DNA of 64,000 nucleotides from Euprymna scolopes (Eukaryota). A program made the position numbers and the translations under genes. Location of the stretch: NCBI GenBank assembly GCA_053919585.1, contig CM132795.1, one strand, 5' to 3'. The notes beneath the pieces were generated by a model. That model had not been told where the DNA came from, ran no database searches, and was given only the letters and a program-made list of their open reading frames with translations. This document shows, piece by piece, positions 3,607 through 27,659 of the stretch (positions are counted from its first letter, which is position 1; every line of letters starts with the position of its first letter).

Positions 3607-3682
3607 CTCTTGCTCACTGATCTCCAGTGATTTCATATTGTTGCCCACAACCTTCAACTCTTCTTCCAATTCTACGATCTTC
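3607..3682 (-). CDS. TPM: Tropomyosin alternative exon 188-213, variant C, canonical muscle type (76 nt)
   Basis: gtattacag|G AAG...GAG|gtaact; (A)[25 protein letters not shown]. Confidence 0.97.
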
Positions 3683-3744
3683 CTGTAATACAGAATACAC
3701 AATTAGCAAGATTTCAGGCATCCCTCAAGCATTGGCTGTCTTAC

Positions 3745-3820
3745 CTGTTCACATTGGACTTCTATTGTTTTGCAAGTGTTACCAACTACATGAAGCTGTT
3801 CTTCAATGTCAAGCCTTTTA
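3745..3820 (-). CDS. TPM: Tropomyosin alternative exon 188-213, variant B (76 nt)
   Basis: ccattacag|T AAA...CAG|gtaaga; (A)KRLDIEEQLHVVGNTCKTIEVQCEQ; absent from the ORF track. Confidence 0.88.
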
Positions 3821-5193
3821 CTGTAATGGCATAGAAAACAGGGTCATTATTGTTTCTTTTGGAGGGGGTGGGTAGCAAAGGGCAGGACAATGCCGGGGCC
3901 TAGCAGTCCAGGCTAACCCTAACCCTAAACCAATATTATGCCAAAACAGCTTTATAGGCAGCCAGATCAGAGCCAGCAACAAAATAGGTGGGAGTCAGGG
4001 TTGAGCAAAGTTTAACAATAAAAAAAAGGCCAATGGAGGTTTGTTTGTTTTTTTTATCTTGCAGAGGTATAGAGAGAAAAATGTACAAAACGTTGACAAA
4101 TAAAAATAAAAACAAATGAATGGAGCCACGAACCAAACTTGAAAGGTTTTAGTAACTTCACAAATATTGTTCACATGTGATAAAAATTTGGTAAATATGA
4201 TTTTATTTTTTGGTTTTTAATCTTAAGTATCCTTGCATACAGCAAAGGGGACAGGATGTAAACGAGAGTGTACAGTTTTTGTCTATTTTATGACAAATAT
4301 AATATTTTGGGGGTATTCAGTACCGAAACAATACATAGTGTAAACGATTGATTGAAGACAAAGTGCTAAATGAAAAGGAAAGAGAACAAAAAGCAAAAGG
4401 GGCGAGTATAAAGTATTTAGAAAAGGAGGAGAACTATGATGAGACCAAAAATAGATAAGAGGACGCTATTGTGGTACTCCAGAACTGGTATAAAAAAAAA
4501 AAAAATAAAAAAAAAACAGGCTCACTCAAGTATGGAGGCCTCTGTAATAAATGAGAATTTGATGGCTCATATGTAAACTGGAGCAGTGGAGGAAATTGAT
4601 AAATATAGGCATTTTGAGAAGATGCTGTGGGTTGGAGGAACTGAGGAAAAAGGTCAAGGTAAGAGAGAGTATTGGCGTTTTGGCTAGGAATAAAGTGTAG
4701 TATCGTTTTTGATAAACACACTACTCCAAACTCAGGCATAGGAGAAATCCTTCTAAATTGAGAAAATTTGATGTTTGGTTCTTGTGGATTTTCTTTACAT
4801 TAGAAACCAACATTGTGTCTAGCTTTGCTCTCACAGGAAGGCAAGTAATTAGATAATCGAGTCTAAAAATATTAGTATAAAAAGCTGAAGATAAGGGGGT
4901 TTAAAGGGGAGACAAGGACGATTAAAAAAGAGATGCTCGATTTGATTTTTTCCATGAAAGTGTTTTTTCATTGACATCAAAAGAAAAAAATCGAAGAACT
5001 TGGTTCATTCAAAGAAATGGTAAGATAAAAAAAATAATGTGAAGTTTCCTTTTTCTTCAAGTTTTGGTTAGCGATTCATCCAAGTCCTACATGAAAAAAA
5101 AATGATACGTAAAATTGACAGGGCTAAACATAAACATCGACAACACGAAGACAAAAAGTAGTTTCGCTCTCTGGCTAAACACTACAAGCTTAC

Positions 5194-5269
5194 CTTAGAT
5201 TCACTAATCTGTAGTGTTTTAAGGTTTCTACTGATTTGGTTAACTTCTTCTTCCAGATCTTTAGATCGC
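5194..5269 (-). CDS. TPM: Tropomyosin alternative exon 188-213, variant A (76 nt)
   Basis: ttttatag|G CGA...AAG|gtaagc; (A)RSKDLEEEVNQISRNLKTLQISESK; absent from the ORF track. Confidence 0.88.
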
Positions 5270-6462
5270 CTATAAAATCCAACAGCACACATGCTCATCA
5301 AAAAATCACATGCAAGGGACGGGGGAAAACTGTCAATACCCAAAACCAATTTTTAAAAAAAAAAGCAAAGGGCCTTGCCAGTTTAAAAAAAAAATGCCAA
5401 CTGACACGGACTACAAAATGGTTCTTTCTTAAAGTGGAACTCCTGTTTCCTATAATAAATGCAAGGGGATAGAATTCCAAATACTCCAAAGCAATCTAAA
5501 CAATATTGTTAGGATTCCTTAGTATTAGACACTTTTCACATAGATAAATATATCTACTTGTTATATATATATCTTGCCCTACACCGGTATTGAGCACTCT
5601 TATATTATACTCGTTAAAATTTCATTGGCTATTTTACCTCTTGAAAATAGCCTGGAATTATATATATATATACATAGGTGTCTGTATCTTGGAAATTTTC
5701 TAACCTTTTAAACTACAGGTAAAAAATACTTTTACTCCTTCATTGGAACACTCCTCTGCTTATAAGTCAATTAATCCATTGTAATCGTTGTATCAGCTTT
5801 TGCTTCCCAAAATTTCCGTTGGTATTAATTTAGAGATAATCATTCATTTATCATGAAAAACTGTTTCGGGATTTAAAAACAAAATATTGTTTTATATCAT
5901 GGGTCTCCAGCAATGTTGATCGAACACAACAGTCCTTAAAAAAACAAAGCTAGAACCGAATATATATATATATGCATACTGGGTACTAATATACAGGGAA
6001 AATTCGATTACCCATTGATATTTGGCGATTTCATATGTGGAAATATTTTATATTTATTCAGCAAACATATTTTCACTGATTGACTGATGAAACTGTAAAG
6101 TACATCCTAGTCCAACAAAATGTGTTTCTCAGACACACACACACTGAAACGGTCGATATCAATTGTTAATCGAATAATAATAAATATACTGTGCTCTAAG
6201 TATCGTAATTAAGACCTTTGTGTCTATTTTTCTTACGTGTACGTGTACATTCTGAATTAAATCATGTAGAATTACAACAAAATATTGTTTGACAAAGGAG
6301 GTCAAATAATTTTTAAAGTTTTTTTCCTTAATGGATTTTCAATCTCATGGGGGGGGGAATGTTATTAGCAAAATGGATATAATGGTAATTATAAATATTG
6401 ATACTAATACTTATTTAGACTTTAGGTTTACAGTATCATACAATCTAACCCTACGGCATTTC

Positions 6463-6708
6463 ATTTAATCTCGCTCCCTCTCCCCCACCCTATATATATA
6501 GTAATTTATAAAATATATATGGCGATTAAGCTAAACTGAATATTCCGCGTTTCATCCACTCTAGGATTCCTCAGGCTTATGCGCATAAGCCTGAAGAGTC
6601 CTAGAGATGATGAAACGCGGAATATTCAGTGTAGCTTAATCGCCATATATATTTTATAAGTTACTATATATATATATATAGGGTGGGGGAGAGAAAGCGA
6701 GATCAAAT
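6463..6708. repeat. ~245-bp loop-less palindrome carrying two opposed hammerhead-like cores
   Basis: Arms of ~120 bp centred on TTATGC|GCATAA (6582/6583); each arm has CTGANGA...GAAACGCGG; a single-arm relative lies at ~39290-39350. Confidence 0.9.
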
Positions 6709-8667
6709 TGTTAAGTCTAAAAAATCTAAAAGCATTCGATCATTTCAAACGTTTAATCAATATGTTTCACATGTTTTATTTTTTTATTATTTAACTTATA
6801 TTTGTGTCAGTTGGCAAAAATTAGTAAAATAAAACAAAAACAATCTCCACGTGTCACAACCTTTTTAAAATGTTAGTAACTTAGGGGTGTACGAGTTGAT
6901 TTATAATTGTTCAACCAAAGATTGTGGAGATTAAGGTACATCAATCCTTTTGGAGTTCTTTGATTCCGTGACAATATTATGTATTGCATTAATTTGTTGA
7001 GGCTGCCAGAAATTTACATATTTATGCCATACGATTAATGACATATCTCTATGGTCTTGAAATCGAAGCTTTTTTTCACTCTCAGTGTAGCAGTGTGCTT
7101 TCGAGTATCTGGCTTTATATATATATATATATATAATGCATATAGCTCTTAGTAAAAAGAATGGAGGGCTTTGGCAGTAGTTTTAAAATTTAAACTGTTT
7201 TGTGGCGACGTAAAATCTTAGTGTAATAGGTCTTAGATGTGGTGTAAATAGCCGGTTTCAACTCTTAACTTAAAACATTGAAGCGTCATGATATTGAGAA
7301 ACAACTGTGGATGATTAATGCGCGCGCGCGTGTGTGTGCGTGTGCGTGTGCGTGTGCGTGTGTGTGTGTGTGTGTGCGCGCGCGCGCAATTCGGCAGCAT
7401 ATTTTGTTAAATAGGAGAGATTTATGTATATTGGATTTATTGGTATTTTTTTTTTGGTAAATTTCTGACGAATATGTCTGATTGCAAACTCAACAGAAAT
7501 CATTTTACAGACGTGTAATTGTTTTTTTTTTTTAGGGATTATGAGAATAAGATTTATTAAAAAAAACAAAAAAAACAAGCAAATTAGTTAATCTGGTTAA
7601 AACATATCCGAATTATTGTCACTTCTTCAAAAAAGTCAAAAACCATAAAAACTATGATTTCCAAAGTTCGAAACCAAAGAGATTTTTTTTTCAGGCAATT
7701 TCTGTTGAGTTTACATACGTAAAAACTCTATTGTACACGTAACACGGATATTATATATGAAAACTGGTCAGACTTTTCAGTCTAACATGGAACTAGAGGC
7801 AGGAAAGACACGTGGAGAGCAATTTCAATCAGTTAAAATATCACACAAAGAGACTGGATGGTAATTACACATTTAGTAGATCGTAAAATTTGACCATTTT
7901 TTTTGTACGAATATTTTTCCATAAATTTTTACCCTCTTTACGTTTTCCTTTTTGAATAGTTTCTGTGTAAAGAGTTACTTCTGTTTTGGTGAAAAAACTT
8001 TTTCAAATTATAAAAAAAACTTTTTTCTTAAAAATTAAATTAATATATATTTGTAAGATGTTCTTTGTAATTTTTTTTTTTGCTAATAACTTTACTATTT
8101 GCCCGTACTCAATCGTAAGGATATATTCAATTATCATGTTAAAGAAAGATTGGCTCAGGAATAAGACTTATTGATTAATTATAATTCGCCTTGGCTTAGA
8201 ATATTTTCAAACAACAACAAAAAAACCATCCAGTCTCTATTAAAACAGATTAGTGAGAAACCAACAGCACAAACCACAATGGATGTGCGTTATTTGATAG
8301 TCACAAAAAGGCAAAGCATTTTTTGTTTTCAAGAAAAAAAATTCATCAAAGCAAGTAAAACCAGTTGTAACAAATTATTGCTTTGTGAAGCCCCATGGCC
8401 GTAGCAGGAGATGCATTTTCTACAACCAGCTAATAACACACACAAAAAATAAATCACCAAACGATCTCACACAATGCAAGTAAAAACAAATTTCTATTTA
8501 ATTAACATTTTCATTTGTTTTGCTACACTTAATATAGTGCAGTTAGGCAAAAAATAATTAATAGAAAAGAAAAAAAGGAGCATTATTTAGAAAGATGTTT
8601 ATTGTTTTAATAATAATTTTGTTTTTAATTTTTGGATATTAGAATCCTTGGTGATAAGTAGGGATCT

Positions 8668-8763
8668 GACAACAGCATATTCTCTTCATTCGTTTTGACT
8701 CTCGAGTATATATCTGATGCAGTTAGACACAGTTAATCAACCGAGAACCACCAAATATATATA

Positions 8764-8829
<66 letters not shown>

Positions 8830-8890
8830 CATAAGATATAAACGGATATATGCTTAAGAGTCAAACAACGAAAAGAATATGCTGCTGCCA
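8668..8890. repeat. Inverted repeat enclosing a (TA)n tract
   Basis: CAGCATATTCT..CGTT..TTGACTCT (8673-8701) vs AGAGTCAAAC..ACGAA..AGAATATGCTG (8857-8884). Confidence 0.7.
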
Positions 8891-9974
8891 CAGCTCTAGT
8901 AATAAGATATCATAAATATAATGAAAGAAATGCTAATTTATTTTTAAAACGTAGCTCCATTATATAAAGATAGGTTTTGCATGTGTGAGAACCAACAAAA
9001 TTGAAAGATAAGAAAATTGTGTGCAAATGAACTGACATATGAATGAACACTTGATAACTTTTTTTTTAATGTCACCATAAAAACATAACATTAACCTAAA
9101 TTGTGAAGCTATACCAGAAAAAAAATTATTTACTCTTTAGAATTTTTTCTGAAAATTTAAAATCTATACATATTATGCAGATTGGCTCTAATGTTTTCTA
9201 AAGAAAAAAATGGGAAGATCTTGAATCATTATCATAATGGAAATGAATTTGTTATGGATTAAAATAAAAACGTCTCCGCTTGGTTTTAGAACTACAATTT
9301 TAACAAGAAAGCACACATTAGAATATATTATGTTTTCTTTTATACTGGTTTTATTTCAATGCTTCCGCCATCTTTTATATTTAATATTTTGAAGTAAAGA
9401 AATAATTTATAAGTAAAACCTGTAATTTATAAAGAGATTTCATTTTTTGTTTCCATTAAATAACGATATTTACTATTATTATTATCAACATATCATTAAT
9501 TTATTTATAACACATTAATTGCTACGCATAAAATCATTAGCAATTCAAGTGTTATAAATAATTAAATAATAAATATGCCTTTCATGTTTATGTTTTCTTT
9601 TAATTCAAATCACAGACGAGGTTGGAAATACATAACTGTCAATTGCTATATGTTTTAGGAAAAGTTAATAAACGTTTGTGGGAAATATGAAAGCCGCCAT
9701 AGGTGGGTACATTACTCTAGAAAGCGTAAGAATCTTTTGCTTTTAACCATTTAAAAACGATTTTTTTTCTAATTTAAAAACTGGTATTAAAACAAATCTA
9801 GAATATTTTTAAAGATGCAGATTCTTGAGTCTTAAGTCGGAACTCGTTTTATTTCTGCCTAAACTTGAAACCATCTAGAGACCAACCTTTTCACAATTGG
9901 TTAAAATCAATAGATCGATACGTGATTAAGTTATTAAAAGCAAAATATATGTGCAAGTGAAAGAGAAGGTTTAT

Positions 9975-10620
9975 CTCGAGCTTTGGATCTGTGCAGAGAA
10001 AGAGACGAAGAGGTTTTTGTAAGCCTTAAATTGGTGTAAACAAAGAGTATTTGCAAACTTTGGATCCATGCAAAGAATGGGCATGGTTCTTTGCAAGCTT
10101 TGGATCCTGCAGTGAAATAGACGAAGAGTATTTTTTTCACGCCTTGGATCCGTGTAATGAAAGTAAGAATAGGGTTCTTCAGGAGCTTTGGATTCGTGCA
10201 AAGAAACAAGACATAGTTATTTGCAAGCCTTGGATCTGTGCAATGAAAGAGAGGAAGGGTTTTTTTTTACAAGGTTTGGATCAGTATAAAGAAAGATAGG
10301 ATATGGTTCTTTACAAGCCTTGGATCCGTGCAGAGAAAGAGAATGGAGTTATTCACGAGACTTAGATTCGTGTAATGAATGACTGATACAGCTTTTTGCA
10401 TGGCCCGTATCAGTGCAATGAAAGATAGGAGTTTACGAAACTTAGATGCAATAAAAGAAAGGGATTATTTGTGAACTTTAGATCCATGCTAAAAAAGAAA
10501 ACGGTTCCTTCGGAACCTCATACTGCGCAAAGAAAGAAAGAATGGGGGTTTTCGCAAGCTCTGTATCAGTTCAATGAAATGTAGACTTATTGGATCCATG
10601 CTAGGAAAGAGACGGAAAAA
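9975..10620. repeat. Highly degenerate ~40-44-bp minisatellite
   Basis: Recurrent GCAAGCCTTGGATCCGTGCAA..AAAGA blocks at ~43-bp spacing. Confidence 0.8.
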
Positions 10621-12570
10621 TGGCAGAAAATCCTTAGCCAGAAGTGTCTGCGATAAGAAAGAGTTAATTTATGACAAGAACCGAATCCATTTAAAGAGAG
10701 GGCGTTTACATGTATAGATGGATCCATATATAACGGATTAAAAGGGCTTATTGCAAGCATTAAATTTGGGCAAGATTCGAAGTTTCATCATTGGCACTGT
10801 TTATAGAATTCACTTGACATAAGCAGTACCAATATCACTGTATCCGCGCAAGAGAAGAGAGAGAAGTGGCATAACGAGTGTTGTTTTAGTACAAGTCAAG
10901 GATATCAAGAAATAAATTGGTCTACGAAAATATGGCCAAAGAATTAAAGGTTATTTTTATGGAAAATAATTTCTTGTGCTTTTATTATTATTTCGATTTT
11001 AGTAAATTTTTAAGATTAAGCACTTTTTATTACCATTATGCCATACGAACATTCTTCAAGACCTTTCCAATTTGTTCAAAGTAAACGGTTACTTTTGGAA
11101 GAACATGCATTCCTGAGAGCCTAAGTGATCAAAGATCGTTATAATACAGCACACAATTTTCACAGATTGAACAAAGAAGAAACACTGACAATTCGATTAA
11201 ACCTTTAAGAGTTTCTATTCAAGTTTTTATATTTATTTTAATTTGTTAAGTCCCCTTCAAGAACAAAACAATCTTATGTTTTATTTACACAATCAGATAT
11301 TTAAAAAAATAATGTCAAGACGTGTAGACTACATTAAATACAGCCCCAAATATTTATAAGGATTTATAGCTAAAATAATTTTTGAATTGCACCCCAATAC
11401 TTCTTATATGGTTTAATTAAACCGACAATTATTAATAATATCGGAGAGTAAAAAATTGACAAAAAATAATATCTATTAATTATTTTTTTGAATAACAGTA
11501 AACAGTATTTCCCTTTGGTTTTAACAACGTTCCAGTCGTTATGGTCAAGTAGGTATAAATCACACAAGTGCTGAGAATTTTGTAAAACATCGGGCAAAGA
11601 TCATAGTGTAGTATTTGTTCTGATGTTACACTTCACCTTTTCTCTCCTCGGTCAGTGGAGGGGAAATCCTTCATGACTGAGAATTTTTATTTTTGTTCCT
11701 TTTCAGAGTGCCCCTTTTTGGAGAGCTGGATTTTCCCCACATTAATAACCGATATTGTGTCTATCTCTGCCCTCGTGGGGAGGAAAGCAAATAGGAACAA
11801 TATTAGCCACACTTTATCAAGGAGAGTAAAATGTGAACTTTAAATTTATTTTCGGCAACATTGTAACTCCTATTTCTCTTATTTTGTCATTTAGTCCTCA
11901 TATTCCATGAGCGAAGTTTCTGACAAAGGGATAATTGCCGTTTTCTTTATTCACAAGCTATCCCTTTAATATGTATTGTTGATTAGTTTTTGAGCTTGAA
12001 TTAGTATTTTTCTTATCTCCTTACATCAAATGGTTTCATGCCTTGTCTGGGGCGATTTTGTAAAATTTTTTTTTTTCTAAAATTGTTCTTAGTTTGATAC
12101 ATAATGTTTATTTTTAAAAAGTGGTAGCTAAGTTTAAAAGTCAGTGTTTCTTCCAAAAGATGATGACAAAAGAGAAGTTGAAGTTTTTGTATTGAAGACA
12201 TAAGACATGCGATCAAACGGCATGCGTGCGGAGCCATCCTGAGTGCACGAATCATTCGGAAGAATTGGTTAAACTATATTTTGGCTTTTCGAAATTAAAC
12301 AGAGTAGCAGAACTAGGAACTATAGTAAATACTTATCATTCTATTTAAAAATATATAAGACTAATATAAAAGGATAGTGTGTATGTATATTAAAAATAAA
12401 ATTAAAGTGAATTAAAAAAATATCTTAACGAACGGAAGCAGACGGAATTAATAAAAGCAAAGACATGTTTTTACAATACAATTGATGAAATGAAAACAAT
12501 AAAATGAAAACCTTTCATGTCTTAGAACAAAGTCAAATACTTACCTTTCTTCCACTAGTAGATATATGCC

Positions 12571-12606
<36 letters not shown>

Positions 12607-12608
<2 letters not shown>

Positions 12609-13015
12609 GGACCCTCCCATCGATTTAGACATATGAAGTTCCACCACAACAATTAAGTTGCTCGGAAATCCACACAGATGATTTGTTTATAATGGTGAAG
12701 GCTTTGTGTAGAACCAACCATACTTTTTGGCATTACTGCTAAACTTCGTCGGTGCAGATGACTGCCACAGGACAAAGTATACAGTATGCTGCAGATTTTT
12801 ACATCCTTCCCTTATATGCATGTCTTAACGAAGACTGGGGGTGCATCTCTCCCAGTGAACTAATGTGCCCCCAGATACCAACCTTGAAATTTCTACGACT
12901 CGGCGCAATACATATCGTGCCTAACATTCCCAAATGGTCACCCATCTCATACTGGCCAGGCTCCACGTTGCTTAACTTTGGTGACCTGGCGAGAACCGGT
13001 GTGTCAACATGATTG

Positions 13016-13019
<4 letters not shown>
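12607..13019 (-). mobile_element. 5S-like head joined to a ~300-nt interspersed repeat (body type 2)
   Basis: 12908-13019 is 5S-like, with AAGTTAAGC and AGATGGGTGACC on the minus strand; 12607-12905 is the reverse complement of 50861-51220. Confidence 0.75.
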
Positions 13020-13080
<61 letters not shown>

Positions 13081-13082
13081 TC

Positions 13083-13200
13083 AACAGAATGTTTCGTCGT
13101 ATCACAGCTCTTCAGTGCGGCTAGATTAGAACCCATCTCGAATCAGAGTTCGAATCTACAACCATCGTTGATAGGCGGTTGTTCGACCGTCTGACCCATA
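13083..13200 (-). mobile_element. Second, more degenerate copy of the tRNA-head plus hammerhead element
   Basis: Minus strand reads TCTAGCCGCA-CTGAAGA-GCTGTGATACGAC-GAAA-CATTCTG-TT, preceded by weak A/B-box-like motifs (TGGGTCAGACGG, AGATTCGAACTC). Confidence 0.65.
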
Positions 13201-13493
13201 AGATCGAGGCTCGCAAGCGACCTCCTCAAACATTTAGGCTTAAAGAGTCGTAAGAAACTGAAATTCAGTGTTATTTTCTTAATTGCTGTCCACTGATTGT
13301 GTTCAAATTTAATGCAAATCTTGACTATTTGAAGTTTTAAATCGCAAAATGCGTCCACATTTTGCCCTTTCTCCTCAATGTACTTTAAAGGAGGCTGATA
13401 GAAACCAACATTTTGTGAATATTTATTGACAAACACCGGAGTTTCAGTTGATTTACATCTAGGAAACTAACGCGATCCGCGATACAACCAGTA

Positions 13494-13583
<90 letters not shown>

Positions 13584-15258
13584 AACAGACAAATAACTAT
13601 ATTATGTGCAACCTTAATGATATAATACTTGTGACAATTTTAGTCCTTAATTCCTTGATTTAAAATTGAAGAACACCTTCGCAAAGATTCCTGTCAACAT
13701 TTATTATTTTCATTGTTTTACGACTTTGTTCAGTAGAGATGAAAGGTTTTAACAAATACAAAATCTATGGAACATGAAAACGAGACTTTAAAATGGAAGC
13801 CGAAATGACTGAAAAGGCCGAGGGATGAAAGGAAGATAAGTCTAATGAAAAGTATGTATGTCAAAGTATATTTATTTTTAACTTGTTAAGATATGCCAAG
13901 GGTTCTTTCTTGTTTGGTACGTGTATAAGCATCTTTACTTACAGTCAAGCGACTTATCATTGCTTTGTTAAAGAATTCAACCACAGGCGGATGGAATTAT
14001 TTCCACACAACTAGAATATTAGATGTGCTTTCGATAGGCTATTCAAAAAATATAAAATTAACATATTTAATTTATTTTAACCAAAACAATGATAGCGTGT
14101 GAGATGATAGTAGTGGGAATTTAAAAGAAAAAACTTCAAATTAACGAAAGACAACAAAACAGGCGTTTGTAGTTTCCCACTTGTGCGTTGAGCTCTCTGG
14201 TGAAAGAAATAACAGTTGTTACTTGGCGTAAAAGCATAACTTTTCGTAATTATAATGGAGGTCTCCAGAAACGGTTATGTAAACATATGGAATTGTAAAA
14301 TTTTATTTGAAACTAAAATGTTTGTTTCTGATTTCTTTTTTTAAAAACTTCATAAGAGTATATTTCTTAACATGAAGTTCGCCTCCACGCAAAACAATAT
14401 TTTCAAAAACCGAAACTTTATATCAACTGAGAAATCAAATTTCGTAGAAACCTTAGAAAATGTGGCTTGAGTTAAGCAAAGCATTGACTCACACATATTA
14501 CTCAATTCAATGGTGTTCAGAGGTTTATTTCTCCAGGAAATCTTTGCAGTGACACCATCAAAACTTTTATTCTCTACAAAATGCAGTTAGCCTGTCAAAG
14601 GACTACCTTTTTTGCTTGATTGTTCGTGTTCGGTTCAGTTGATGGTGACATCCAGTGTACGGCAAAAGAGTGTCTCTATAACCAATCCAACTCTCAGGGG
14701 ACGAGTAGGTCTGACAGCACATTCTCGTCTTCCCTTTCCGACAGTCAAGAGAATCACCTACTTTGTCTTTTGCTTCTCTGAGAGTTGCAATGATTCTAGC
14801 TAAGAGTAGAATAGATCACAAAGGTCAGGGGATGACCAACGGTTATCACGGTTACCATACTTTTGAGAACATGGTGGCCAATTTCTCAACATGTATATTT
14901 TATATTTTTCGCAAATAAATAATTCAAAGTGTAATAACTGATCATATATTACACTTCATATTTACTGTCTTCGGTCAGTGAAAGAAGTCTTCCTAGATTT
15001 CAGAGTGACCCGTTAAGAAGGGGGAGCGGAAGTTGATCTTACTCCCATTAAAACTGATCTTGTGTTCAAACACGTAATCATAAAAAGGCAAGTAAAAACG
15101 CAATAATCAACCTTTCATGTTTTAAGCTTTCGTCGTCGGCCAATATTAAGTCATTTTCAACAATCTTACAACGACAAATTGTATAAGGAAGGAGAAAAAA
15201 TGAAGTGAAGACATTGATATAAAAAAATAAAAATGGCGACAAAATGGCGGATACTTAC

Positions 15259-15329
15259 GCTTCAGCAGCCTCTAAACGGGCTTCTGCACGCTCAAGGTCA
15301 ACTTCTGTAATGGCCAGCTTACGGGCAGC
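15259..15329 (-). CDS. TPM: Tropomyosin exon, residues 165-188 (71 nt, single copy here)
   Basis: cttatacag|GCT...GAAGC|gtaagt; AARKLAITEVDLERAEARLEAAE(A). Confidence 0.97.
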
Positions 15330-19404: not shown

Positions 19405-19815
19405 TGTAGGTCTGCAGTCCTTGGAAGGCTGCAGGCACCGAGGAAGTGCCTTGAAGGATGATACAAAAGTAATGAGGAGCGGTGAGACCAGCAGTGAAAG
19501 AAGGGAGAATACAGACGGAAACGGTCTGCATCAGAGCTCTGAGAATCAGACGCCACGAATATCTGTGGCATCTGCAACAGAGCTTGTAGATCCAGAATAG
19601 GCTTGTACAGTCATAGTAGACGCTGCAATGCAATTAACCAATGGACAAAGCATCAGTGCTCTCAGAACCAGACACCACCAATATTTGTGACATCTGCAAC
19701 AGAGCCTGTAGATCTAGAATAGGCTTGCACAGTTAGAGCAGATGCTGTAACTTAGCAACGGACTGGTCTGAAGTGCATAACTCCATTTTCCCCAGACAGA
19801 CGAATACCAACAAAA
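19405..19815 (+). mobile_element. RTE-type LINE 3' fragment with tandemly duplicated C-terminal Cys/His motif
   Basis: Reading frames with stops give TNICGICNRACRSRIGLYSHSRRCN and again TNICDICNRACRSRIGLHS*SRCCN about 122 bp later. Confidence 0.75.
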
Positions 19816-20293
19816 ATACTTATAGAGTCCGAAATTCACTATAGAAAAAGCAATAAAAAAATTATCTCGTACCTTTAATTGGTTAAATGCTACTTCAGAT
19901 TGAAGTGTCATCTAGAACATTTTCACAACGATATTCTTTTTCTTTTCAAAATCAATTGCAAAATAATTGTACATAAAAATAGAAAACGAGGCTAACTGCT
20001 ACTTTTAATGAACATTAAAAGCAGTCGCCATTATAATTTCAAATCCAGAGAAATAAACAAACAAAGACGAACAAGAAGCAACAGCGATAAGATTTGCGAT
20101 ATGATCAACAAAGGCGGCAGTAATGGCGACCATGATGCTTAGCCAAAGATGTGTAGCCATTATTTTAAAAAGAGGCCAAAGCTGCTGGTCATATTTTAAT
20201 CCAAATAAACCATTAAAAAGCCAGTAGTCAATCAAATTTATGTAGCCAGTTAAAAAAAAAAGGTGCTTAGTTAGAATTAAACTTATTTAAAAC

Positions 20294-20570
20294 ACGGCAT
20301 AATCATATTGACACACCGGTTCTTGTTAGATCACGGGTTAAGCAACGTTGAGGCTGGTCACTACCAGATTAGTGACCAATTTGGGAATTTTAGGCGCTGT
20401 ATGTAGGAGGATGTCGACATCTCCCTGCAAGAGTTGCAAAAACCTAACGCCATCATCTCCCCTAACAGGAATATACATGTGACTGGGCCGCTTGTGAATT
20501 TCATACTCCCATAAAACTTCTTCATTTGGAGGAAGTCGGTTAAACCCGCATAGGGTTAGCGTCGTTTCCA
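20294..20570 (+). mobile_element. 5S rRNA-headed SINE-like element
   Basis: 20294-20404 resembles mollusc 5S (CACCGGTTCT..GATCAC..GTTAAGCAACG..GTGACC..TGGGAAT..GCTGTA) with many substitutions, followed by a non-5S body; 3' boundary approximate. Confidence 0.75.
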
Positions 20571-23473
20571 TTTTTTTTTTTTTAATTATTTAAAAAGAAA
20601 AACTTAATAGCAAAAACATCTGTATAATGTATGCAATCGTCACGGAACGAAGACGTCATATTCTCAAATATCATTTAAATTGATCAAATTTTGTTTTTTA
20701 TATAGAGAAAATCATTTGTTTGCGAATTTTAGCGATTATGATAGGAAATTGTAGCCATTAGAATACTGATTTTGATCTTGACGGTTCGGATTGAATTGCT
20801 CTCCTCTTATTTATTAAACATGTTGGTTCAAAACATGACGTCTCACTTCATCATAAAATTTGATTTTCTCTGTTAAAAAAAAAATGTCACTTTACGTGAT
20901 TTTTGGAATATGACGTTTGAATGCCGTGGGGGATACGTACATAAAAGTTGTTGAATAATCATTTTTTTCTGTATTTGTTTATTTAAAAAATGTTTTTAAT
21001 TCTAAATAAGCACCAAAAATAGAGCGGAAGCGGAAGTAGTTGAAAGCAGTCTAATAGGAAGTATTTAATCATTTTTTAAGCATATGATTATTTAAGATTT
21101 TCATATTTTCTTTAGCGTTTATGGATGGGGTTACGTCTCCTGCATTTTATCAGCAAACATACTGTTAAGTTTTTTTTTAATGCTTTATTAAAATCCAGGA
21201 CACATTTCGCTTAATAATTAAACTTTCAAAATACGTTTTCAGTGAGTCTTTCTATAATGAATTAATACATTTAAATATAACAAACAAACAGCAAAAAAAG
21301 CAAACAAGAAAAATCACAACGATAATGTTAATAATTAATCATAATAATAATTATGTAATAATAATTATAAATAATAATTGTAATAATAGTGAAAACATAA
21401 AATTAATAAGTACATAGAATTCAATTATAAAATATTAATTAGACAAAACTGTAAAAATAAAGGTTAAAATATCATTTAAAAAGCAGAGATTTTTAAAAAG
21501 GGAAGACATTTAATCAAATATAATGAATTAAAAATAAAAACGTTTACAAATTAAAAATAAACATTGATTAAGTTTAAATAAAAATTGATGTTCTTTTAAA
21601 TAAATAAAAAACTGAAATTAGTTATTCTGGAGGTTTTCAACGAAATGTTGGTACCACTAGTGGATTAGAGACAATACACTGAAAAGTAAGTACAAGTTAA
21701 ATTGGTATCCTGGATAATAAGGCTTGGAATAATTACAGTACATATTATCGAAGAATCAGTGGAAAATTTCAAAGATTTAAACTGAGTTGGGTGTTTGTGT
21801 CTGAATTGTGTTTGTGGGCGCTATTTCTAAGCGATTAGATATAAGAACGTGAAATTTAATAAAAAATGATCTGTTAGCGATCATATTAAGGGAGCATATG
21901 AGCCAGTGAGATACATCTCTTGGCTATTCTGTAACAGAGAGCGGACGCACGTATGGCAGTTGGATGCAAATGACCGAGCTCTGACACCACGACAAGGATG
22001 ACGAAAAAAAGAATATGTGTGCGGACCAGAAATCACGCTCGGAAATCACGTCAGAGAATCACGCTCGGAAATCACGTCAAAGAAGAACAGAGCTAGATGT
22101 GTTACGCACGGTGGTCGAGAGCGACAAAAATAAAAAAGAATTGTAAATAAATGTTTGCAAATGTCAGTTGTTTCACTAAGGAAAAAAAGTCAGGCGAGTT
22201 ATTCACTTTTTATGTTTCTTGCGACGGAGTTTACAACCTGTTGGGTCCTTACATGTTAACAGCTTTAAATGTGCGTAATCATGCGTAACATTACAATCCG
22301 CCCAACTTGAAATAAGTAAACTCGAGAACATTGGACCAATTCTTTTTGTAATTCGGAACTGGGATACCATGTAGCAGTGCGAATAACAGAGGCTACGTAT
22401 AATAATACTAGAGTATACTCTCCTTCGAAAATGGTGAAAATAAATTGTTTCGTCAATGTTCGCACTAATACCCTTATAAAACTATAGAATCATGCCAGTA
22501 ATTCAAATTTTCATGTATAAATTATCAATCATTTTTGACGATATTAAAAAAATAAAAAAATCACTCGTTGATATTTTATCTATAATGGAGGTTCCCCTTC
22601 CCTCGAATTTATTTCGGACATTGAGGATGTCTAACATGTTATTTGCTTTCTCGATTCTCCTTACAATTTGAAATAGTTTTGTCCAGCACTTTTTACCCAC
22701 ATTATCGTGGTAAAATCGAAGTACACAAACACACATACACACATATAGCAATATCAATCAGGGTTTTATCACTCAATGAAGCACCCCACCATGGACTTTA
22801 TTCATCTATCTCTGTCTATATATATATACATATAGATTATAGATTACATTTTGTCTCTAATTTTCACTGAAATTGATATGCTATAATGTGATTTTATTAT
22901 TATTTTGATAAATATATTTTGGGAAAAGGATGTGGTTCCCGAAATATAAAAAAATATTCCAATCCAGGATCTTAAGAATATCAACAGTAGATCTTATATT
23001 TACTGATATTGTATGTGGTAAATGTATCGAAAATTAAATGGATAATTGTGAAGATTTATGTCTAAAATATTATCTTCGGTTTTAAGTTTTCGCTTATTTT
23101 TTTCACCATTCCGTTTTGTTTTTGTTTCGTTTTTTTTTGCATTGCTATCATCCTTCATAAATATCCATATACTTATTTACCTGCAATGCTGCAAGCAAAC
23201 TACCCTTTAAATGCAAGAATTTTAGTAATACAGAGTAAACATTTCTGTATTTTGCCTTATTTTTCACTAAGTCGCTCATCCTGGCAAGGCTGAGTGCACA
23301 CACACAAACACGCATCACACACTCTCAATGCTCCTTATCTTGAGTTGAGCATATTGAGAAGTGATACACGATATAGGGTTAGCGTATTAAGCGATGCTCT
23401 TTGTGTAAACAAATCGAGCTTAGGGATTCGGACGATGTCAAAAACATCGTTAATTCACTGCCCGCACATCAGC

Positions 23474-23596
23474 TGCTGATTGGTGTAGTGGTTCAAAGCC
23501 TTGACTGTCATACGGGCGGTCGGGTTTCGATCCTGGCTTGAGTAGTTGCATGTCTAGCCGCACTGATGAGCTGTGATACAGCGAAACAGTACTGTT
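23474..23596 (+). mobile_element. tRNA-headed SINE-like element ending in a hammerhead ribozyme core
   Basis: A-box TGGTGTAGTGG (23481), B-box GGTTTCGATCC (23523), then CTGATGA-GCTGT-gat-ACAGC-GAAA-CAG-ta-CTG-TT (23563-23596). Confidence 0.75.
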
Positions 23597-24074
23597 TAAA
23601 CTTAACTCCCGTTTCCTCTACAGATTTTGGTCCTTAACTGAAAGAGATTGTGTAACGTAATTCAGTTCAAATCGCAAAAAATGTGTAATAATGTAAGTAA
23701 ATTTCAAAAGTCTGAAAATATTAGGGTTCATTTAAGAGGGTAAAAGTCTAAATTATGACTACGTTAAGGAAAGGATTTTGTTTTAATTGGATATCAGTGT
23801 TTTCAAAATTGTTCAATGTTTTAACACATTAGGATTTTACTAAGAAAGTTAGTATTGTTCATTAGTCTCATTCGTGTGTATGTTACCAATTTGTTGGCTT
23901 ATAGCAACTTTGATCTGATAAATGACGAGCTTGTCTAAAAGGTGCTGTATGTGGAAGAAAGGTGAAACCTTTGAAAAAAATACCTAAAAATGTCTTTAGC
24001 ATGTACTCCAGCATAACTTGCTAATCTACACGTGTTGACAAAGTGGAACAATCGCCGCGTGTGACGAAGTTCTC

Positions 24075-24655
24075 CGTAAAAAATTTACAATTGGGAGCAA
24101 TTTGAAGTATAGACAACAAAAGAAAAACTCGTAAAAAAACATATAACAAATAAATGTTACTAAAAGCAAACTAAGTTGCCTTTCTACCTGCTTAAATAAA
24201 CGTTTTGTGTTTTAACTTTTTAAAATGTTTAAAAAGAAAGCGTAGAAAAAAAATGGCTGACATTAGACATTCATCTGAAGAGTCAATAATCGCTCAAAAA
24301 TAGAAAATCAGATAAAATACTGGTAGAAACCCACCCAATAAATATCACGGCGACATTTATTGGGTAATTTTTCTACTAGTATTTAGTTTAATTTTCGATT
24401 TTTGAGCTATTACCGATATTCCCCAGATAACTGTATAATTTCAGGCATTTTTTCCTTGTTCTGACACAAAGATTCGATATTACTTTTCAAAGTAAATAAA
24501 CACTTTCAAATAAGTTAAAACACAAAAATATTCAGATAGAGAAAAGAGTAACTTATCTTGCTTTTGGTAACATTTATTTGTTACATATTTGGTTTGTTTT
24601 TTTTTTACTATTTTTTTGTCTGTTTATACAGTAAAATGCCCCAATTTGTTTTATA
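24075..24655. mobile_element. ~580-bp foldback/MITE-like element
   Basis: Long imperfect inverted arms, e.g. ATAACAAATAAATGTTACTAAAAGCAA vs TTGCTTTTGGTAACATTTATTTGTTAC, and CCCAATAAAT vs ATTTATTGGG at the centre. Confidence 0.75.
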
Positions 24656-25094
24656 TTTTTTACTTTTTATTTATTTCTTTTAGTCAACAAAATTTGGTTT
24701 TGCTGAATTTTATTTTATTTGATAGAAATTATCCACTGATCTTTCATAGATAAACAAATTTTTGTCAACAAAATTGTACATGCATTGTCATCACAATTCA
24801 AGCAGTTTAACTCCATGCTGTAAATCTAGTTCTATTTGCTATCTGCATTGTATTTCTTTTTTGTTCAATTATTTTTAAAGAACAAAATTTCTTTTTCTTT
24901 TTTCAAATCAAAGTCGAGAGATCTTTGATTTTTTAAAAACTGCTAGGCAAGCAAATTTTTTTTTCTGTTCAAAGCAATTCCAAACTTTGCTACTAAATTT
25001 CTTTTTTTTTTTTTAGTTTGTTTTTCAAAAATAGCATTTTGCCAAAAAAAATTTTTTTTGCATCAGACTGGCACAGCAAACGCCATGCTGTCAC

Positions 25095-25212
25095 CTCGTC
25101 AAACTTCCGGTCAGCATCTTCAGCGATCCATTTGGCTTCTTCTAACTGTTTCTCCAGCAAGTCAATGCGTTCCTCATCTCCTTGGCTTCTGTTCTCCAAT
25201 ACTTTGCGCCCT
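25095..25212 (-). CDS. TPM: Tropomyosin alternative exon 125-164, variant D, canonical muscle type (118 nt)
   Basis: ctccactag|A GGG...GAG|gtgaca; (R)[39 protein letters not shown]. Confidence 0.97.
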
Positions 25213-25511
25213 CTAGTGGAGCAGAACAGACATGGCTCATAAGTTCAAAAGATAGGTATAAAGGATTATTTTTAGAAAAAAAAAAAAAAAAAAAGGAAAA
25301 AAACGCAAGCGACGCTGGAGGGGAGGTAGATTATTAGTCATGTTAAAAAAAGTAATTAAAGATCATGAACCAAGTAGTCACTGTGGTGATTGTCACATAT
25401 TTTAAACGCACGCAATGCAACGCTTTGGTGGAGGGTCTAGCAGCGACAGTAAGGTATGGGGAAAGGTTCAAGGGGGCGTGGTCATGCTTTATACTTGGCG
25501 CGTGCAATCAC

Positions 25512-25629
25512 CTCATCGAATTTGTGATCAGTTTCTTCAGCAATATATTTCGCTTCTTTGAGTTCAGCCTCAAGCGCGTCGATCCTCTCGTCGTCAACTT
25601 GAGTGCGACTTTCTAGTACCTTTAGCGCT
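25512..25629 (-). CDS. TPM: Tropomyosin alternative exon 125-164, variant C (118 nt)
   Basis: tgctcgcag|A GCG...GAG|gtgatt; (R)ALKVLESRTQVDDERIDALEAELKEAKYIAEETDHKFDE. Confidence 0.92.
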
Positions 25630-25865
25630 CTGCGAGCAGATGTGGAAGAAAGAGTAAGATCTTTAAAAAAGCAGCTCGCAGTTGGAGGGGCCTGGGATCG
25701 GGATAGGTAGGTCAAGAAAAAGGGTGTGTTGATCCTTAATCATACTTATTGCAGACCCTTCAGCCATACAACTGTGAGGATATAGATGGTCATCTAATAA
25801 CCCTTATTGAGAATATTTTTTTTTTGTAATCAAAAAACGTGTTGGCAATATCCAGTAATTATTAA

Positions 25866-26095
25866 CCCTTAACCGCCAGAATCTTTTTTATGCAATTAAT
25901 AATTTTTTAAACATGAAACTCACACGTGACAGAAGTTAACATGCAACTGACGCACGGACATAAACAAAGCCCTCATTCACTTGTTGAACCATACATAGAC
26001 CTTTACTTTGAAGACCAGTTGGGTTGACAAGCCATAAGAGTAAGAAATATCGTTTTTAGAAAGGCGACTTGAAAGTACAATTTGGCGGTAAAGGG
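25866..26095. mobile_element. piggyBac-type MITE (230 bp)
   Basis: TTAA|CCCTTAACCGCCA ... TGGCGGTAAAGGG|TTAA: terminal inverted repeats with TTAA duplication. Confidence 0.8.
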
Positions 26096-26356
26096 TTAAC
26101 AATGCTGTGATCTGAGGCCCAGGTTCAATCCCCACCCAGCGTTCGGTCCCTCATCTGTTTGCAATTCTATCCCTATTTTGAATATTTGGTGAACGATTAT
26201 CTCAGCTTCTTTTCCTAATGTAAAGCAGTACTTTGATAATAAACAATACATCTAAATGAATAAATGAGAACGTTTTTTTATTCCTTCGAAAAAGATCAAA
26301 ACTAATTTAAAATCATTAAATACCATTCTAAAGTTCTCTCAATATTGCTAATTAAC

Positions 26357-26711
26357 CAGCGGCGTAGTAAGGATGGGGGAATTAGTTGCGATCCGCCCTG
26401 GGCGTCACGTGCCGGGAGCGACATTTTGAAGGGATAAAAAAAGCAAAAAAAAAAAAAAAATTAAAATAATTAAAAAAAATAACAAAAACATCTAGACATT
26501 TTATACCAAAATGAGTTTTTTTTTTAAAATATTTTTGTATTTTGTGTCTAATACTATTTTTAAACGGAATTAAAGATCCTTGATTGTAATTTCATGAAAA
26601 TAAATATTTTAGGGCCTCCTAGAATTTTTAAGGTTAACAGATTATCAACAGCCAGCAGGGGTGCAAATCTTACGACCGCATCGGGTGGCAAAAATAGTTG
26701 CTACGCCACTA
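26357..26711. mobile_element. hAT-type MITE (355 bp)
   Basis: TIRs CAGCGGCGTAG / CTACGCCACTA, flanked by an exact 8-bp duplication TAATTAAC (26349-26356, 26712-26719). Confidence 0.85.
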
Positions 26712-27349
26712 TAATTAACTACTCAATATCTAACGATTAACAAACAGTTATCGACACAGTTAGTTGCATAGAAAATCCTGCATCTAACCCACACCTGTCC
26801 TTATGTCTAACTTCCTCGAGAATAAGTAAATAAATACTCGATTTGCTGACATGTTTCTTGATGGAAAATATTTCTAATAAGGGTTAATAGTAGTAATATG
26901 ACCGATTCCGATTTGCATAGCTTCAAGGCCTGTTATAAGTATTGCCTTGGTGGTATCGCAATGGAGAGCAGCTGGATACGGGATTCAGAAAATCGCAGAG
27001 CATTATTAAAGGAGGGAAAGGGCTTGACCATAGAGAGGGAAATAGGAAAGGAGATGAGATAGGATGGAACTCTGAAATAAAATTTCAATTAGTCATCTAC
27101 AGAAAAAAAGAAAAGAAAACAGTTAGATTTTACATATACATAGGCATACAATTTCAAAATAAAAATAAATAATAAACAAAGAGACAGTAAATCGACTACC
27201 AGTCATATCTTTGTTGGGTTTGTTTTCTCGTTAATTTTGTGCGGTACATTAACTGCTATACACCAGCATCTTCTGCTCCAGACATTTTGTTTCTATGTCT
27301 GTTTTTATAAAGGACGATGTGGAAGAAAAGCGCCTTCACAGCAACATAC

Positions 27350-27467
27350 CTCTTCGTATTTCCGTTCGGCCTCGTTCGCCGTCTGATTGTATTGTTTCAT
27401 CATATCTTCCAGGTAGCTGATTCTCTCATCGTCGCCGAGGGATCTGTTTTCTAGTGCTTTCTTCGCT
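27350..27467 (-). CDS. TPM: Tropomyosin alternative exon 125-164, variant B (118 nt)
   Basis: cccacacag|A GCG...GAG|gtatgt; (R)AKKALENRSLGDDERISYLEDMMKQYNQTANEAERKYEE; absent from the ORF track. Confidence 0.88.
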
Positions 27468-27541
27468 CTGTGTGGGGGTAAAAAACCGGATCAACAACAA
27501 AACGTGCATGCATACTAAGATTGCCACCAAATCAAACATAC

Positions 27542-27659
27542 CTCGTCGTACTTTTTCTGCGTTTCAGTAGCGAATAGCTCGGCCTCTTTACACTTCTGTT
27601 CCAATCTTGTAATATGGTCCTCATCCATGGAGCTGCGGTTCCTCAACACCTGGACAGCT
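27542..27659 (-). CDS. TPM: Tropomyosin alternative exon 125-164, variant A (118 nt)
   Basis: ggtggtag|A GCT...GAG|gtatgt; (R)AVQVLRNRSSMDEDHITRLEQKCKEAELFATETQKKYDE; no stops, same length and phase as variant D. Confidence 0.88.

What the first reader, a model, noticed from the sequence alone, without database searches (positions are those of the whole stretch)
3607..27659. Two-cluster (4 x 3) mutually exclusive exon system in a cephalopod-type tropomyosin gene
Seen: four intact 118-nt paralogues of exon 125-164 and three intact 76-nt paralogues of exon 188-213, all with GT-AG ends, identical phases and no stops, separated by one single-copy 71-nt exon. Three are invisible in the ORF track and would be easy for annotation to miss. 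Neither 118 nor 76 is divisible by 3, so including none or two from a cluster frameshifts. Established: tropomyosin genes use mutually exclusive exons, and vertebrates use only a pair (6a/6b) at the second position and a single exon at the first. Inference: up to 12 combinations of the actin/troponin-contacting core, probably tissue-specific. I cannot confirm whether this has already been described.
Basis: partly seen in the sequence, partly recalled or inferred. Interest (0 to 1): 0.88.

Follow-up and report, generated by a model that had tools for sequence, protein, structure and literature searches.

The report
Tropomyosin gene's swappable exon sets
This cephalopod tropomyosin gene carries four interchangeable copies of one exon, all shown here to be used one at a time, and three copies of another, but such clusters are already annotated in octopus and published for other invertebrate tropomyosins, so it is a well-supported ordinary case.

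Summary
A minus-strand tropomyosin gene has four 118-nt paralogues of the exon for residues 125-164 (4A, 4D, 4B, 4C). It also has three 76-nt paralogues of the exon for residues 189-213 (6B, 6C, 6A). All have AG/GT ends, the same phase and no stops.

Raw poly-A RNA-seq of the same organism shows each 118-nt exon spliced from exon 3 and to the 71-nt exon. No reads join two cluster members, and the usage ratios differ between samples. Skipping or double inclusion gives an early stop.

Octopus bimaculoides has the same 6B-6C-6A order and a 61-nt 6C-6A intron. All three variants appear in annotated octopus isoforms.

Novelty is low:
- Octopus RefSeq/ENA annotation already lists 30+ isoforms using variants A, C and D and all three exon-6 variants. 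It also has a second 71-nt exon and alternative exons 8 and 9.
- Mytilus shows a 4/2/3 pattern.
- C. elegans lev-11 has a validated trio of the same 118-nt exon.

In this genome the second 71-nt exon survives only as a copy without an AG acceptor.

Verdict: real, expressed mutually exclusive clusters; a new member of a known kind.

The parts
40594..40727 (-). Constitutive exon 3 (134 nt, residues ~81-125); ends in a split AG codon
   Evidence: Pfam PF00261 E=3.5e-11. Its last bases form the 'behind' loose ends of all four 118-nt exons.
27542..27659 (-). Exon 4A, 118 nt, residues 125-164 variant A
   Evidence: AG/GT ends, open frame. 974/829 reads join it to exon 5a and 1116/940 to exon 3 in X23/X24. 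32/39 aa identical to octopus variant A.
27468..27541 (-). 74-nt intron between 4A and 4D; holds a UGCAUG 30 nt after 4A and 45 nt before 4D
   Evidence: Length, motif. No 4A-4D joint reached the listing threshold.
27350..27467 (-). Exon 4D, 118 nt, variant D
   Evidence: AG/GT ends. 356/431 reads to exon 5a and 431/433 to exon 3. 23/39 aa identical to octopus variant D.
25512..25629 (-). Exon 4B, 118 nt, variant B
   Evidence: AG/GT ends. 150 reads to exon 5a in X23; a contig of word depth 25000 in X6 covers exon 4B, and X6 has a contig loose end at 25631 matching exon 3. Closest to the canonical mollusc type: 28-30/39 to Mytilus and Ostrea.
25095..25212 (-). Exon 4C, 118 nt, the cloned-muscle-type variant; 39/39 identical to octopus
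   Evidence: AG/GT ends. 198/100 reads to exon 5a; dominant in X6. Pfam E=2.2e-11.
15259..15329 (-). Exon 5a, 71 nt, residues 165-188; the partner of all four exon-4 variants in the runs examined
   Evidence: Its first bases form the 'before' loose-end consensus at all four donors, agreement 1.
15112..15182 (-). Second 71-nt copy (5b relic), orthologous to the octopus alternative exon TVRRLKVVEHELGIAEETSLHNK; open frame and GT donor, but AT instead of AG at the acceptor
   Evidence: tblastn E=0.001; sequence; heptad core kept; no Pfam hit; no sign of use.
5194..5269 (-). Exon 6B, 76 nt, residues 189-213 variant B; (U)GCAUG 25 and 45 nt upstream
   Evidence: AG/GT ends. Orthologue in O. bimaculoides L002 1934-2009 has 9 aa changes with the core kept. 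The upstream 27 nt are identical between species. Used in octopus isoforms.
3745..3820 (-). Exon 6C, 76 nt, variant C
   Evidence: AG/GT ends. 25/25 aa identical to octopus, 6 silent differences. Used in octopus isoforms.
3683..3744 (-). 62-nt intron between 6C and 6A, with a CUAAU branch-point candidate 42 nt from the donor; 61 nt in O. bimaculoides
3607..3682 (-). Exon 6A, 76 nt, canonical variant
   Evidence: AG/GT ends. 25/25 aa identical to octopus, 3 silent differences. Pfam E=8e-7.
3545..3606 (-). Conserved intron stretch just after 6A, with two UGCAUG motifs (+14 and +56) identical in octopus
3902..3981 (-). Conserved intronic block 80-160 nt upstream of 6C, predicted to pair with the 6C polypyrimidine tract, acceptor AG and first exon bases
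   Evidence: Alignment. The same closing helix appears in the consensus fold and in each species alone; energy z-scores are only -1.6 and -1.9.

Best explanation
Window 3.6-40.7 kb holds the middle of a cephalopod tropomyosin gene (exons 3-6, minus strand). Tandem exon duplication has produced two clusters of mutually exclusive exons: four versions of the 118-nt exon and three versions of the 76-nt exon.

Shown:
- One 118-nt member is spliced between exon 3 and exon 5a in each mRNA.
- All four members are used, and their proportions differ between samples.
- Members are not joined to each other at the detection limit.

Shown from sequence: 118 and 76 are not multiples of three, so skipping or double inclusion puts a stop codon in the next exon or the one after.

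Inferred: exclusivity is enforced in two ways. Very short introns between adjacent members (74 nt for 4A-4D, 62 nt for 6C-6A) place the likely branch point about 42-51 nt from the upstream donor. That is at or below the spacing known to block splicing between exons 2 and 3 of mammalian TPM1. For the more widely spaced members, frame-shifted products would be removed by nonsense-mediated decay.

Inferred: exon choice is set by tissue-specific factors. UGCAUG (Rbfox-type) motifs are concentrated next to the alternative exons. A conserved intronic block can base-pair with the 6C acceptor.

The resulting proteins keep the coiled-coil core and differ on the surface of the actin/troponin-facing middle of the molecule.
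For: Exon anatomy and frames.

Family: PF00261 hits at identical profile positions for all four 118-nt variants; heptad a/d core and D137 kept.

Expression and exclusivity:
- Stranded poly-A reads give depth 49-1317 on the four exons against 0.1-16 in most intron bins.
- The loose ends at all four donors equal the start of exon 5a (X23: A 974, D 356, C 198, B 150).
- Acceptor-side loose ends equal to the end of exon 3 are listed for all four exons: raw reads for 4A and 4D in both runs and 4C in X24, and an X6 contig for 4B.
- No joint between cluster members reaches the 3-read listing threshold.
- A dominates in X23/X24, while C dominates in the X6 contigs.

Conservation:
- Octopus isoforms carry variants A, C and D and all three exon-6 variants.
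- O. bimaculoides genomic DNA has 6B-6C-6A in the same order, with AG/GT ends and a 61-nt 6C-6A intron.
- Only exon-proximal intron sequence is alignable.

Regulation leads:
- 7 of 14 sense-strand UGCAUG motifs in the 37.5-kb span lie within 200 nt of exons, binomial p=3e-5.
- The two motifs after 6A are identical in octopus.
- A conserved helix masks the 6C acceptor.

Precedent: C. elegans lev-11 has a 118-nt trio 5a/5c/5b and the pairs 4a/4b and 7a/7b (PMC4165533). Recurrent tandem exon duplication in tropomyosin is reviewed in PMC3342872.
Against: - No reads were laid on the 76-nt cluster in this species (one read-laying run allowed), so use of 6B and 6C here rests on orthology.
- 6B has diverged fast: 9 of 25 residues differ from octopus.
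- Absence of double-inclusion reads cannot separate a splicing block from decay.
- Introns of about 60-75 nt are spliced efficiently in many invertebrates, so the steric argument may not hold in cephalopods.
- The UGCAUG enrichment is weakened by an antisense control that is also enriched (3 of 7).
- The 6C helix has unremarkable folding z-scores, and none of its pairs is kept through a change on both sides.
- Tissue identities of the runs are coded, so tissue specificity is shown only as a difference between samples.
Confidence: 0.85

Rival explanations
1. Some copies, especially 6B and possibly 6C, are decaying pseudo-exons in this species. The real system would be smaller than 4 x 3.
For: 6B differs from octopus at 9 of 25 residues and 19 of 76 bases. 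6B and 6C give no Pfam hit. The neighbouring 5b copy shows that exon copies do decay here, since it has lost its AG. No RNA evidence was obtained for the exon-6 cluster in this species.
Against: Both keep AG/GT ends, frame, length and heptad core in two species whose introns are otherwise unalignable. 6C has 6 silent and 0 replacement changes. The 27 nt before the 6B acceptor are identical in octopus. Both are used in annotated octopus isoforms. All four exon-4 copies proved to be expressed.
Confidence: 0.08
2. Exclusivity is produced by competing RNA base-pairing (a docking site and selector sequences, as in Dscam exon 6) rather than by short introns and decay.
For: Members separated by 299-1720 nt cannot be excluded sterically. 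A conserved intronic block pairs with the 6C acceptor. A U-run and an A-run bracket exon 4C.
Against: The inverted-repeat scan of the exon-4 cluster found only A/U runs and a transposon-like pair. No element is complementary to several members. The 6C helix masks one exon rather than choosing among several. No second-species sequence for the exon-4 cluster could be fetched.
Confidence: 0.1
3. The copies come from assembly duplication, or belong to separate tropomyosin genes or pseudogene fragments rather than to one transcript unit.
For: None beyond the tandem arrangement.
Against: Paralogues are only 38-64% identical in protein, so they are not assembly duplicates. Each is spliced to the same exon 3 and exon 5a. 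The arrangement is the same in an independent octopus assembly.
Confidence: 0.01

Closest known systems
Octopus bimaculoides LOC106871823 (RefSeq 'tropomyosin Tod p 1.0102', isoforms up to X34) and the Octopus vulgaris CAI97216xx models
   Same: Orthologous gene. Annotated isoforms use exon-4 variants A, C (39/39 identical) and D and all three exon-6 variants. Genomic order 6B-6C-6A with a 61-nt 6C-6A intron.
   Different: The isoforms I could retrieve show no B variant. They do use a second 71-nt exon (5b), which here lacks an AG acceptor. Octopus also shows alternative exons 8 and 9 and alternative N-termini, which lie outside this window.
C. elegans lev-11 tropomyosin (exons 4a/4b, 5a/5b/5c, 7a/7b, 9a/9b)
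   Same: Several mutually exclusive clusters in one tropomyosin gene. These include a trio of homologous 118-nt (3n+1) exons, the same length and frame class as the 118-nt cluster here. Validated by RT-PCR (PMC4165533).
   Different: Three members rather than four. Intervening introns are 155 and 123 nt. Fidelity there did not depend on mRNA decay. Duplications in different phyla are considered independent (PMC3342872).
Mytilus tropomyosin (RefSeq isoforms up to X28)
   Same: Four distinct exon-4 variants, two exon-5 variants and three exon-6 variants among the retrieved isoforms. Mytilus variants 1 and 4 resemble B and C.
   Different: Predicted isoforms only. Orthology of individual variants with the cephalopod ones is not resolved with 39 residues.
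Vertebrate TPM1/TPM2 mutually exclusive exons (2a/2b, 6a/6b)
   Same: Same exon sizes (118, 71, 76 nt) and the same 76-nt alternative position. TPM1 exons 2/3 are excluded because the branch point lies about 41 nt from the upstream donor; here the candidate lies at 42 nt. Chicken beta-tropomyosin exon 6B is repressed by an RNA stem; here a conserved helix could mask 6C. These precedents come from my own knowledge of Smith and Nadal-Ginard 1989 and Libri et al. 1991 and were not checked in the library.
   Different: Vertebrates have pairs only and a single 118-nt exon.

Membership tests
Tropomyosin (Pfam PF00261) | Sequence match to the family profile | tested here: met
   Exon 3 E=3.5e-11; 4C 2.2e-11; 4B 1.1e-9; 4D 1.6e-7; 4A 4.4e-6; 6A 8e-7; 5a 0.008. 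Only exon 3 (43.5), 4C (44.1) and 4B (38.6) reach the 38.6-bit whole-protein cut-off; the other pieces are too short. 85-100% identity to octopus tropomyosin exons.
Tropomyosin (Pfam PF00261) | Unbroken heptad coiled coil with apolar a/d core | tested here: met
   All seven variants keep L130, D137, L144, I141, A155, Y/F162, or L/I193, V/I200, L/I207.
Tropomyosin (Pfam PF00261) | Canonical metazoan exon sizes 134/118/71/76 nt with conserved phases | tested here: met
   The 118-nt (3n+1) exon length matches the C. elegans lev-11 exon-5 trio.
Mutually exclusive exon cluster from tandem exon duplication | Homologous adjacent exons of equal length and phase with their own splice sites | tested here: met
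Mutually exclusive exon cluster from tandem exon duplication | Each member is spliced to the same flanking exons | tested here: met
   Exon-4 cluster: loose ends equal to the exon 3 tail and the exon 5a head at all four members. Exon-6 cluster: not tested with reads in this species; supported only by octopus isoform models.
Mutually exclusive exon cluster from tandem exon duplication | No mRNAs with two members or none | tested here: met
   No joint between 4A, 4D, 4B and 4C reached 3 reads in two libraries, each with about 1,400-1,700 donor-junction reads among the listed rows. All-skipping (exon 3 to 5a) could not be seen in the stretch laid. Decay could hide rare events.
Mutually exclusive exon cluster from tandem exon duplication | Frame or stop penalty for double inclusion or skipping | tested here: met
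   Stops 11-22 codons after the aberrant junction in every tested combination.
Steric-hindrance exclusion (TPM1 exon 2/3 type) | Branch point too close to the upstream 5' splice site for the intervening intron to be removed | tested here: inconclusive
   Introns of 74 and 62 nt, with yUnAy candidates at 51 and 42 nt from the donor. Real branch points and the minimal spacing in cephalopods are unknown.
Docking-site/selector RNA competition (Dscam exon 6 type) | One conserved element complementary to a sequence next to each member | tested here: not met
   The inverted-repeat scan of 25000-27750 gave only A/U runs and a transposon-like pair. No comparative data for this cluster.
Rbfox-regulated alternative exons | Conserved (U)GCAUG close to the regulated exons | tested here: met
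   7 of 14 motifs lie within 200 nt of exons, p=3e-5. The two after 6A and the GCAUGs before 6B are conserved in octopus. The antisense control is also enriched (3 of 7).
Rbfox-regulated alternative exons | Binding and dependence on the factor | not testable with these tools
   Needs CLIP or knock-down.

The most novel reading that the evidence does not exclude
Exon choice in the three adjacent clusters (118, 71 and 76 nt) is coordinated by a conserved cis code. The code combines UGCAUG motifs, placed after favoured exons and before rival ones, with an RNA helix that masks the 6C acceptor. Only a subset of the 12 or more combinations would then be made. The decayed 5b exon in this lineage would mark a recent rewiring of that code relative to octopus.
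Probability: 0.15. Interest if true: 0.5.

Novelty: new member of a known kind. Interest (0 to 1): 0.3.

Why it matters
Tropomyosin isoforms tune how actin filaments bind myosin, troponin and other partners. They are also the main shellfish and cephalopod allergen. Four versions of residues 125-164 and three of 189-213, all keeping the coiled-coil core, give cephalopods a graded set of filament surfaces.

The case is useful as a cleanly documented example with junction-level RNA support. It adds short conserved introns and conserved flanking motifs that can be tested in minigenes. It does not change current understanding, because recurrent tandem exon duplication and multi-member exclusive clusters in invertebrate tropomyosins are published, and the octopus isoforms are already in public annotation.

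Tried and rejected
- Irimia et al. 2010 (PMC2912468), the key paper on tropomyosin exon duplication, is not held. I relied on the 2012 review instead.
- The representative search with exon 3 returned mostly fragments and read-through gene models, which served only as bridges to full-length proteins.
- Fetching the octopus exon-4/5 genomic region failed. Only one product (P0157) is on record, and its locus covers exons 6-9 only. P0347, P0343, P0268 and P0352 are not on record. I therefore could not compute dN/dS for the 118-nt exons, find an octopus orthologue of B, or check the octopus 5b acceptor.
- No 284-residue muscle isoforms or decapodiform proteins appeared in the three homology searches, so B-type use in other cephalopods remains unchecked.
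- Upstream exons (1a/1b, 2, N-terminal extension) and exons 7-9 were sought and are not in the window.
- A docking/selector search in the exon-4 cluster gave nothing convincing.
- Literature searches for cephalopod tropomyosin splicing found no dedicated paper in the held library.
- An AT-AC (U12) reading of the 5b acceptor was considered and rejected, because all upstream donors are GT and not U12-like.


Full report
**What is there**

Six-frame scanning and tblastn with the exon peptides show a tropomyosin gene on the minus strand. The window holds:
- exon 3 (40727-40594, 134 nt)
- four 118-nt paralogues of the next exon: 4A 27659-27542, 4D 27467-27350, 4B 25629-25512, 4C 25212-25095
- one 71-nt exon (5a, 15329-15259)
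- three 76-nt paralogues: 6B 5269-5194, 6C 3820-3745, 6A 3682-3607

Every copy has an AG acceptor preceded by a pyrimidine-rich tract, a GT donor, the same phase and no stop. Paralogue matches have E-values of 3e-6 to 4e-14 for the 118-nt copies. The much shorter 76-nt copies give 3e-4 to 0.09, and no further copies appear at E up to 100.

All four 118-nt peptides align to the same positions (85/86-122) of Pfam PF00261 Tropomyosin. All seven variants keep the apolar a/d heptad positions, and the four 118-nt variants also keep D137. Only variant C has G126. Exons 1-2 and 7-9 are outside the window.

**One correction to the observation**

Octopus isoforms use an alternative 71-nt exon (TVRRLKVVEHELGIAEETSLHNK). 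Its orthologue is present here 76 nt downstream of 5a (15182-15112). It is 71 nt long, open, coiled-coil compatible and followed by GT. The dinucleotide before it is AT, not AG. The only AG between the 5a donor and that point is the one inside the donor's own GTAAGT. In the two RNA libraries examined, the downstream loose ends of all four exon-4 variants were uniformly exon 5a (agreement 1). In this lineage the second 71-nt exon looks like a recently disabled copy, or one used very rarely through a non-canonical site.

**Are the exons used, and exclusively?**

RNA runs of the same organism were found. Two raw-read poly-A libraries (X23, X24) and two contig sets (X6, X5) were laid on 25000-27750.

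Depth on the four exons is 49-1317, against 0.1-16 in most intron bins. It lies on the strand expected for a minus-strand RNA.

| Exon (donor place) | Reads to exon 5a, X23 | Reads to exon 5a, X24 |
|---|---|---|
| 4A (27541) | 974 | 829 |
| 4D (27349) | 356 | 431 |
| 4B (25511) | 150 | not among the listed rows |
| 4C (25094) | 198 | 100 |

At every donor the unaligned part of the reads is the reverse complement of the start of exon 5a. At the acceptors (27661, 27469, 25214, 25631) it is the reverse complement of the end of exon 3. These acceptor rows are raw reads for 4A and 4D in both runs and for 4C in X24. For 4B the listed row is an X6 contig.

No joint between any two members reaches the three-read listing threshold. 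Each of the four exons is therefore spliced exon 3 > member > exon 5a, one at a time.

Proportions differ between samples. A > D > C ~ B in X23 and X24, whereas the X6 contigs give C (word depth about 142,000) >> B ~ A (about 25,000-36,000) > D (about 8,000). That is regulated use, although the tissues are coded and unknown to me.

**Consequences of mis-splicing**

Conceptual splicing shows that any single choice keeps the frame. Skipping exon 4, including two 118-nt members, including two 76-nt members, or including 5a plus 5b all give a stop in the next exon or the one after, 11-22 codons beyond the aberrant junction.

Introns inside the clusters are 74 nt (4A-4D), 1720 nt (4D-4B), 299 nt (4B-4C), 1373 nt (6B-6C) and 62 nt (6C-6A).

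**The 76-nt cluster**

A locus from the O. bimaculoides assembly (L002) contains 6B, 6C, 6A, exon 7, 8a/8b and 9a/9b in the same order. AG/GT ends flank each 76-nt exon, and the 6C-6A intron is 61 nt.

| Exon | Differences from octopus |
|---|---|
| 6A | 3 silent changes, no replacements |
| 6C | 6 silent changes, no replacements |
| 6B | 19 bases and 9 residues; all a/d positions kept |

Outside about 150 nt around the exons the introns are not alignable. The conserved flanks and the conserved tiny intron are therefore under constraint. All three variants occur in annotated octopus isoforms. I consider their use here very likely but not shown.

**How it probably works**

- Shown: single inclusion, regulated proportions, and the frame penalty.
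- Inferred: for the adjacent pairs 4A/4D and 6C/6A, the intervening intron places the best yUnAy branch-point candidates about 51 and 42 nt from the upstream donor. For 6C/6A this is the geometry that prevents splicing of exon 2 to exon 3 in mammalian TPM1 (my knowledge; the steric principle is summarised in PMC4165533). Whether 62-74-nt introns are unspliceable in cephalopods is untested.
- Inferred: for the widely spaced members, decay of frame-shifted mRNAs is the obvious backstop.
- Lead for choice: UGCAUG hexamers are concentrated near the exons. Seven of 14 in the 37.5-kb span lie within 200 nt of an exon, p=3e-5. The antisense control is also somewhat enriched. Two sit 14 and 56 nt after 6A and are identical in octopus. 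GCAUGs sit 25 and 45 nt before 6B and are conserved. One sits inside the 74-nt 4A-4D intron. By the established position rule for Rbfox proteins, these would favour 6A and 4A and disfavour 6B and 4D.
- Lead for 6C: a conserved block 80-160 nt upstream of 6C is predicted, in each species separately and in the consensus, to pair with the 6C pyrimidine tract, acceptor AG and first exon bases. The energy z-scores are modest (-1.6, -1.9) and no pair of this helix is kept through a change on both sides. This is a lead reminiscent of the stem that represses chicken beta-tropomyosin exon 6B, not a finding.

**Comparison with what is known**

The homology searches show that O. bimaculoides RefSeq carries isoforms numbered up to X34 and O. 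vulgaris about 34 models. Among those retrieved, the variants seen are exon-4 A, C and D, exon-5 a and b, exon-6 A, B and C, two versions of exon 8, two of exon 9, and alternative N-termini.

Mytilus isoforms show four, two and three variants at the same three exons. Read-through gene models from gastropods contain three 118-nt-type copies. One of these (in P0151) is 34/39 identical to cephalopod C, and another is of the B-like canonical type. The B/C split is therefore probably older than cephalopods.

C. elegans lev-11 has an RT-PCR-validated trio of 118-nt exons plus two further exclusive pairs. Recurrent tandem duplication of tropomyosin exons across bilaterians is a published theme. No paper in the held library treats cephalopod tropomyosin splicing specifically.

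**Verdict**

The feature is real and, for the 118-nt cluster, directly shown to be a four-way mutually exclusive choice. It is a new, well-documented member of a known kind, not a new kind. The pieces that go beyond existing annotation are:
- expression of variant B
- the disabled 5b copy
- the conserved short introns
- the conserved UGCAUG motifs and acceptor-masking helix

Noticed in passing
window 15112-15182 (-): A second 71-nt exon copy, orthologous to the octopus alternative exon 5b. It is open, heptad-compatible and has a GT donor, but AT replaces the AG acceptor. No sign of use in the two RNA libraries.
   Followed up: partly
window 3902-3981 (-) with 3795-3835: A conserved intronic block pairs with the pyrimidine tract, acceptor and first bases of exon 6C in both this genome and O. 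bimaculoides. It is a candidate acceptor-masking helix.
   Followed up: partly
window 27698, 27512, 15504, 15457, 5314, 3593, 3551 (first base, minus strand): UGCAUG (Rbfox-type) motifs cluster within 200 nt of the tropomyosin exons. The two after 6A are identical in octopus.
   Followed up: partly
window 25002-25039 and 25260-25299: A U-run upstream and an A-run downstream (RNA sense) bracket exon 4C and could pair to loop it out. They may simply be low-complexity sequence.
   Followed up: no
window 25858-26103: An inverted-repeat element in the 4D-4B intron (arms 25858-25889 and 26072-26103). It shows higher depth than neighbouring intron, reads on both strands, several variant letters and a 73-nt skip. 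It looks like a dispersed repeat (MITE-like) transcribed from many copies.
   Followed up: no
window 27541-27638: A few reads 'go back' within exon 4A, with 20 nt of exon 5a in between (2-4 reads per run). They are probably template-switch chimeras and were not pursued.
   Followed up: no
window 39903-40299 and 44763-45655: Two tandem-repeat arrays lie in the introns flanking exon 3. One has a period of about 40 nt and lies just downstream of exon 3. The other is a longer array whose repeats give long spurious ORFs.
   Followed up: no
proteins P0017, P0151, P0002, P0270: Public gene models in other molluscs read through tandem alternative tropomyosin exons and so concatenate several copies of the same exon. 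These are mis-annotations that still reveal the exon clusters.
   Followed up: partly
L002 7880-8248 and 10000-11557 (O. bimaculoides): The octopus locus shows further alternative pairs at exon 8 (AAEAERTVSKLQKEVDRLE / TECAERECNLLHKGKAVLE) and exon 9. These lie outside this window.
   Followed up: no
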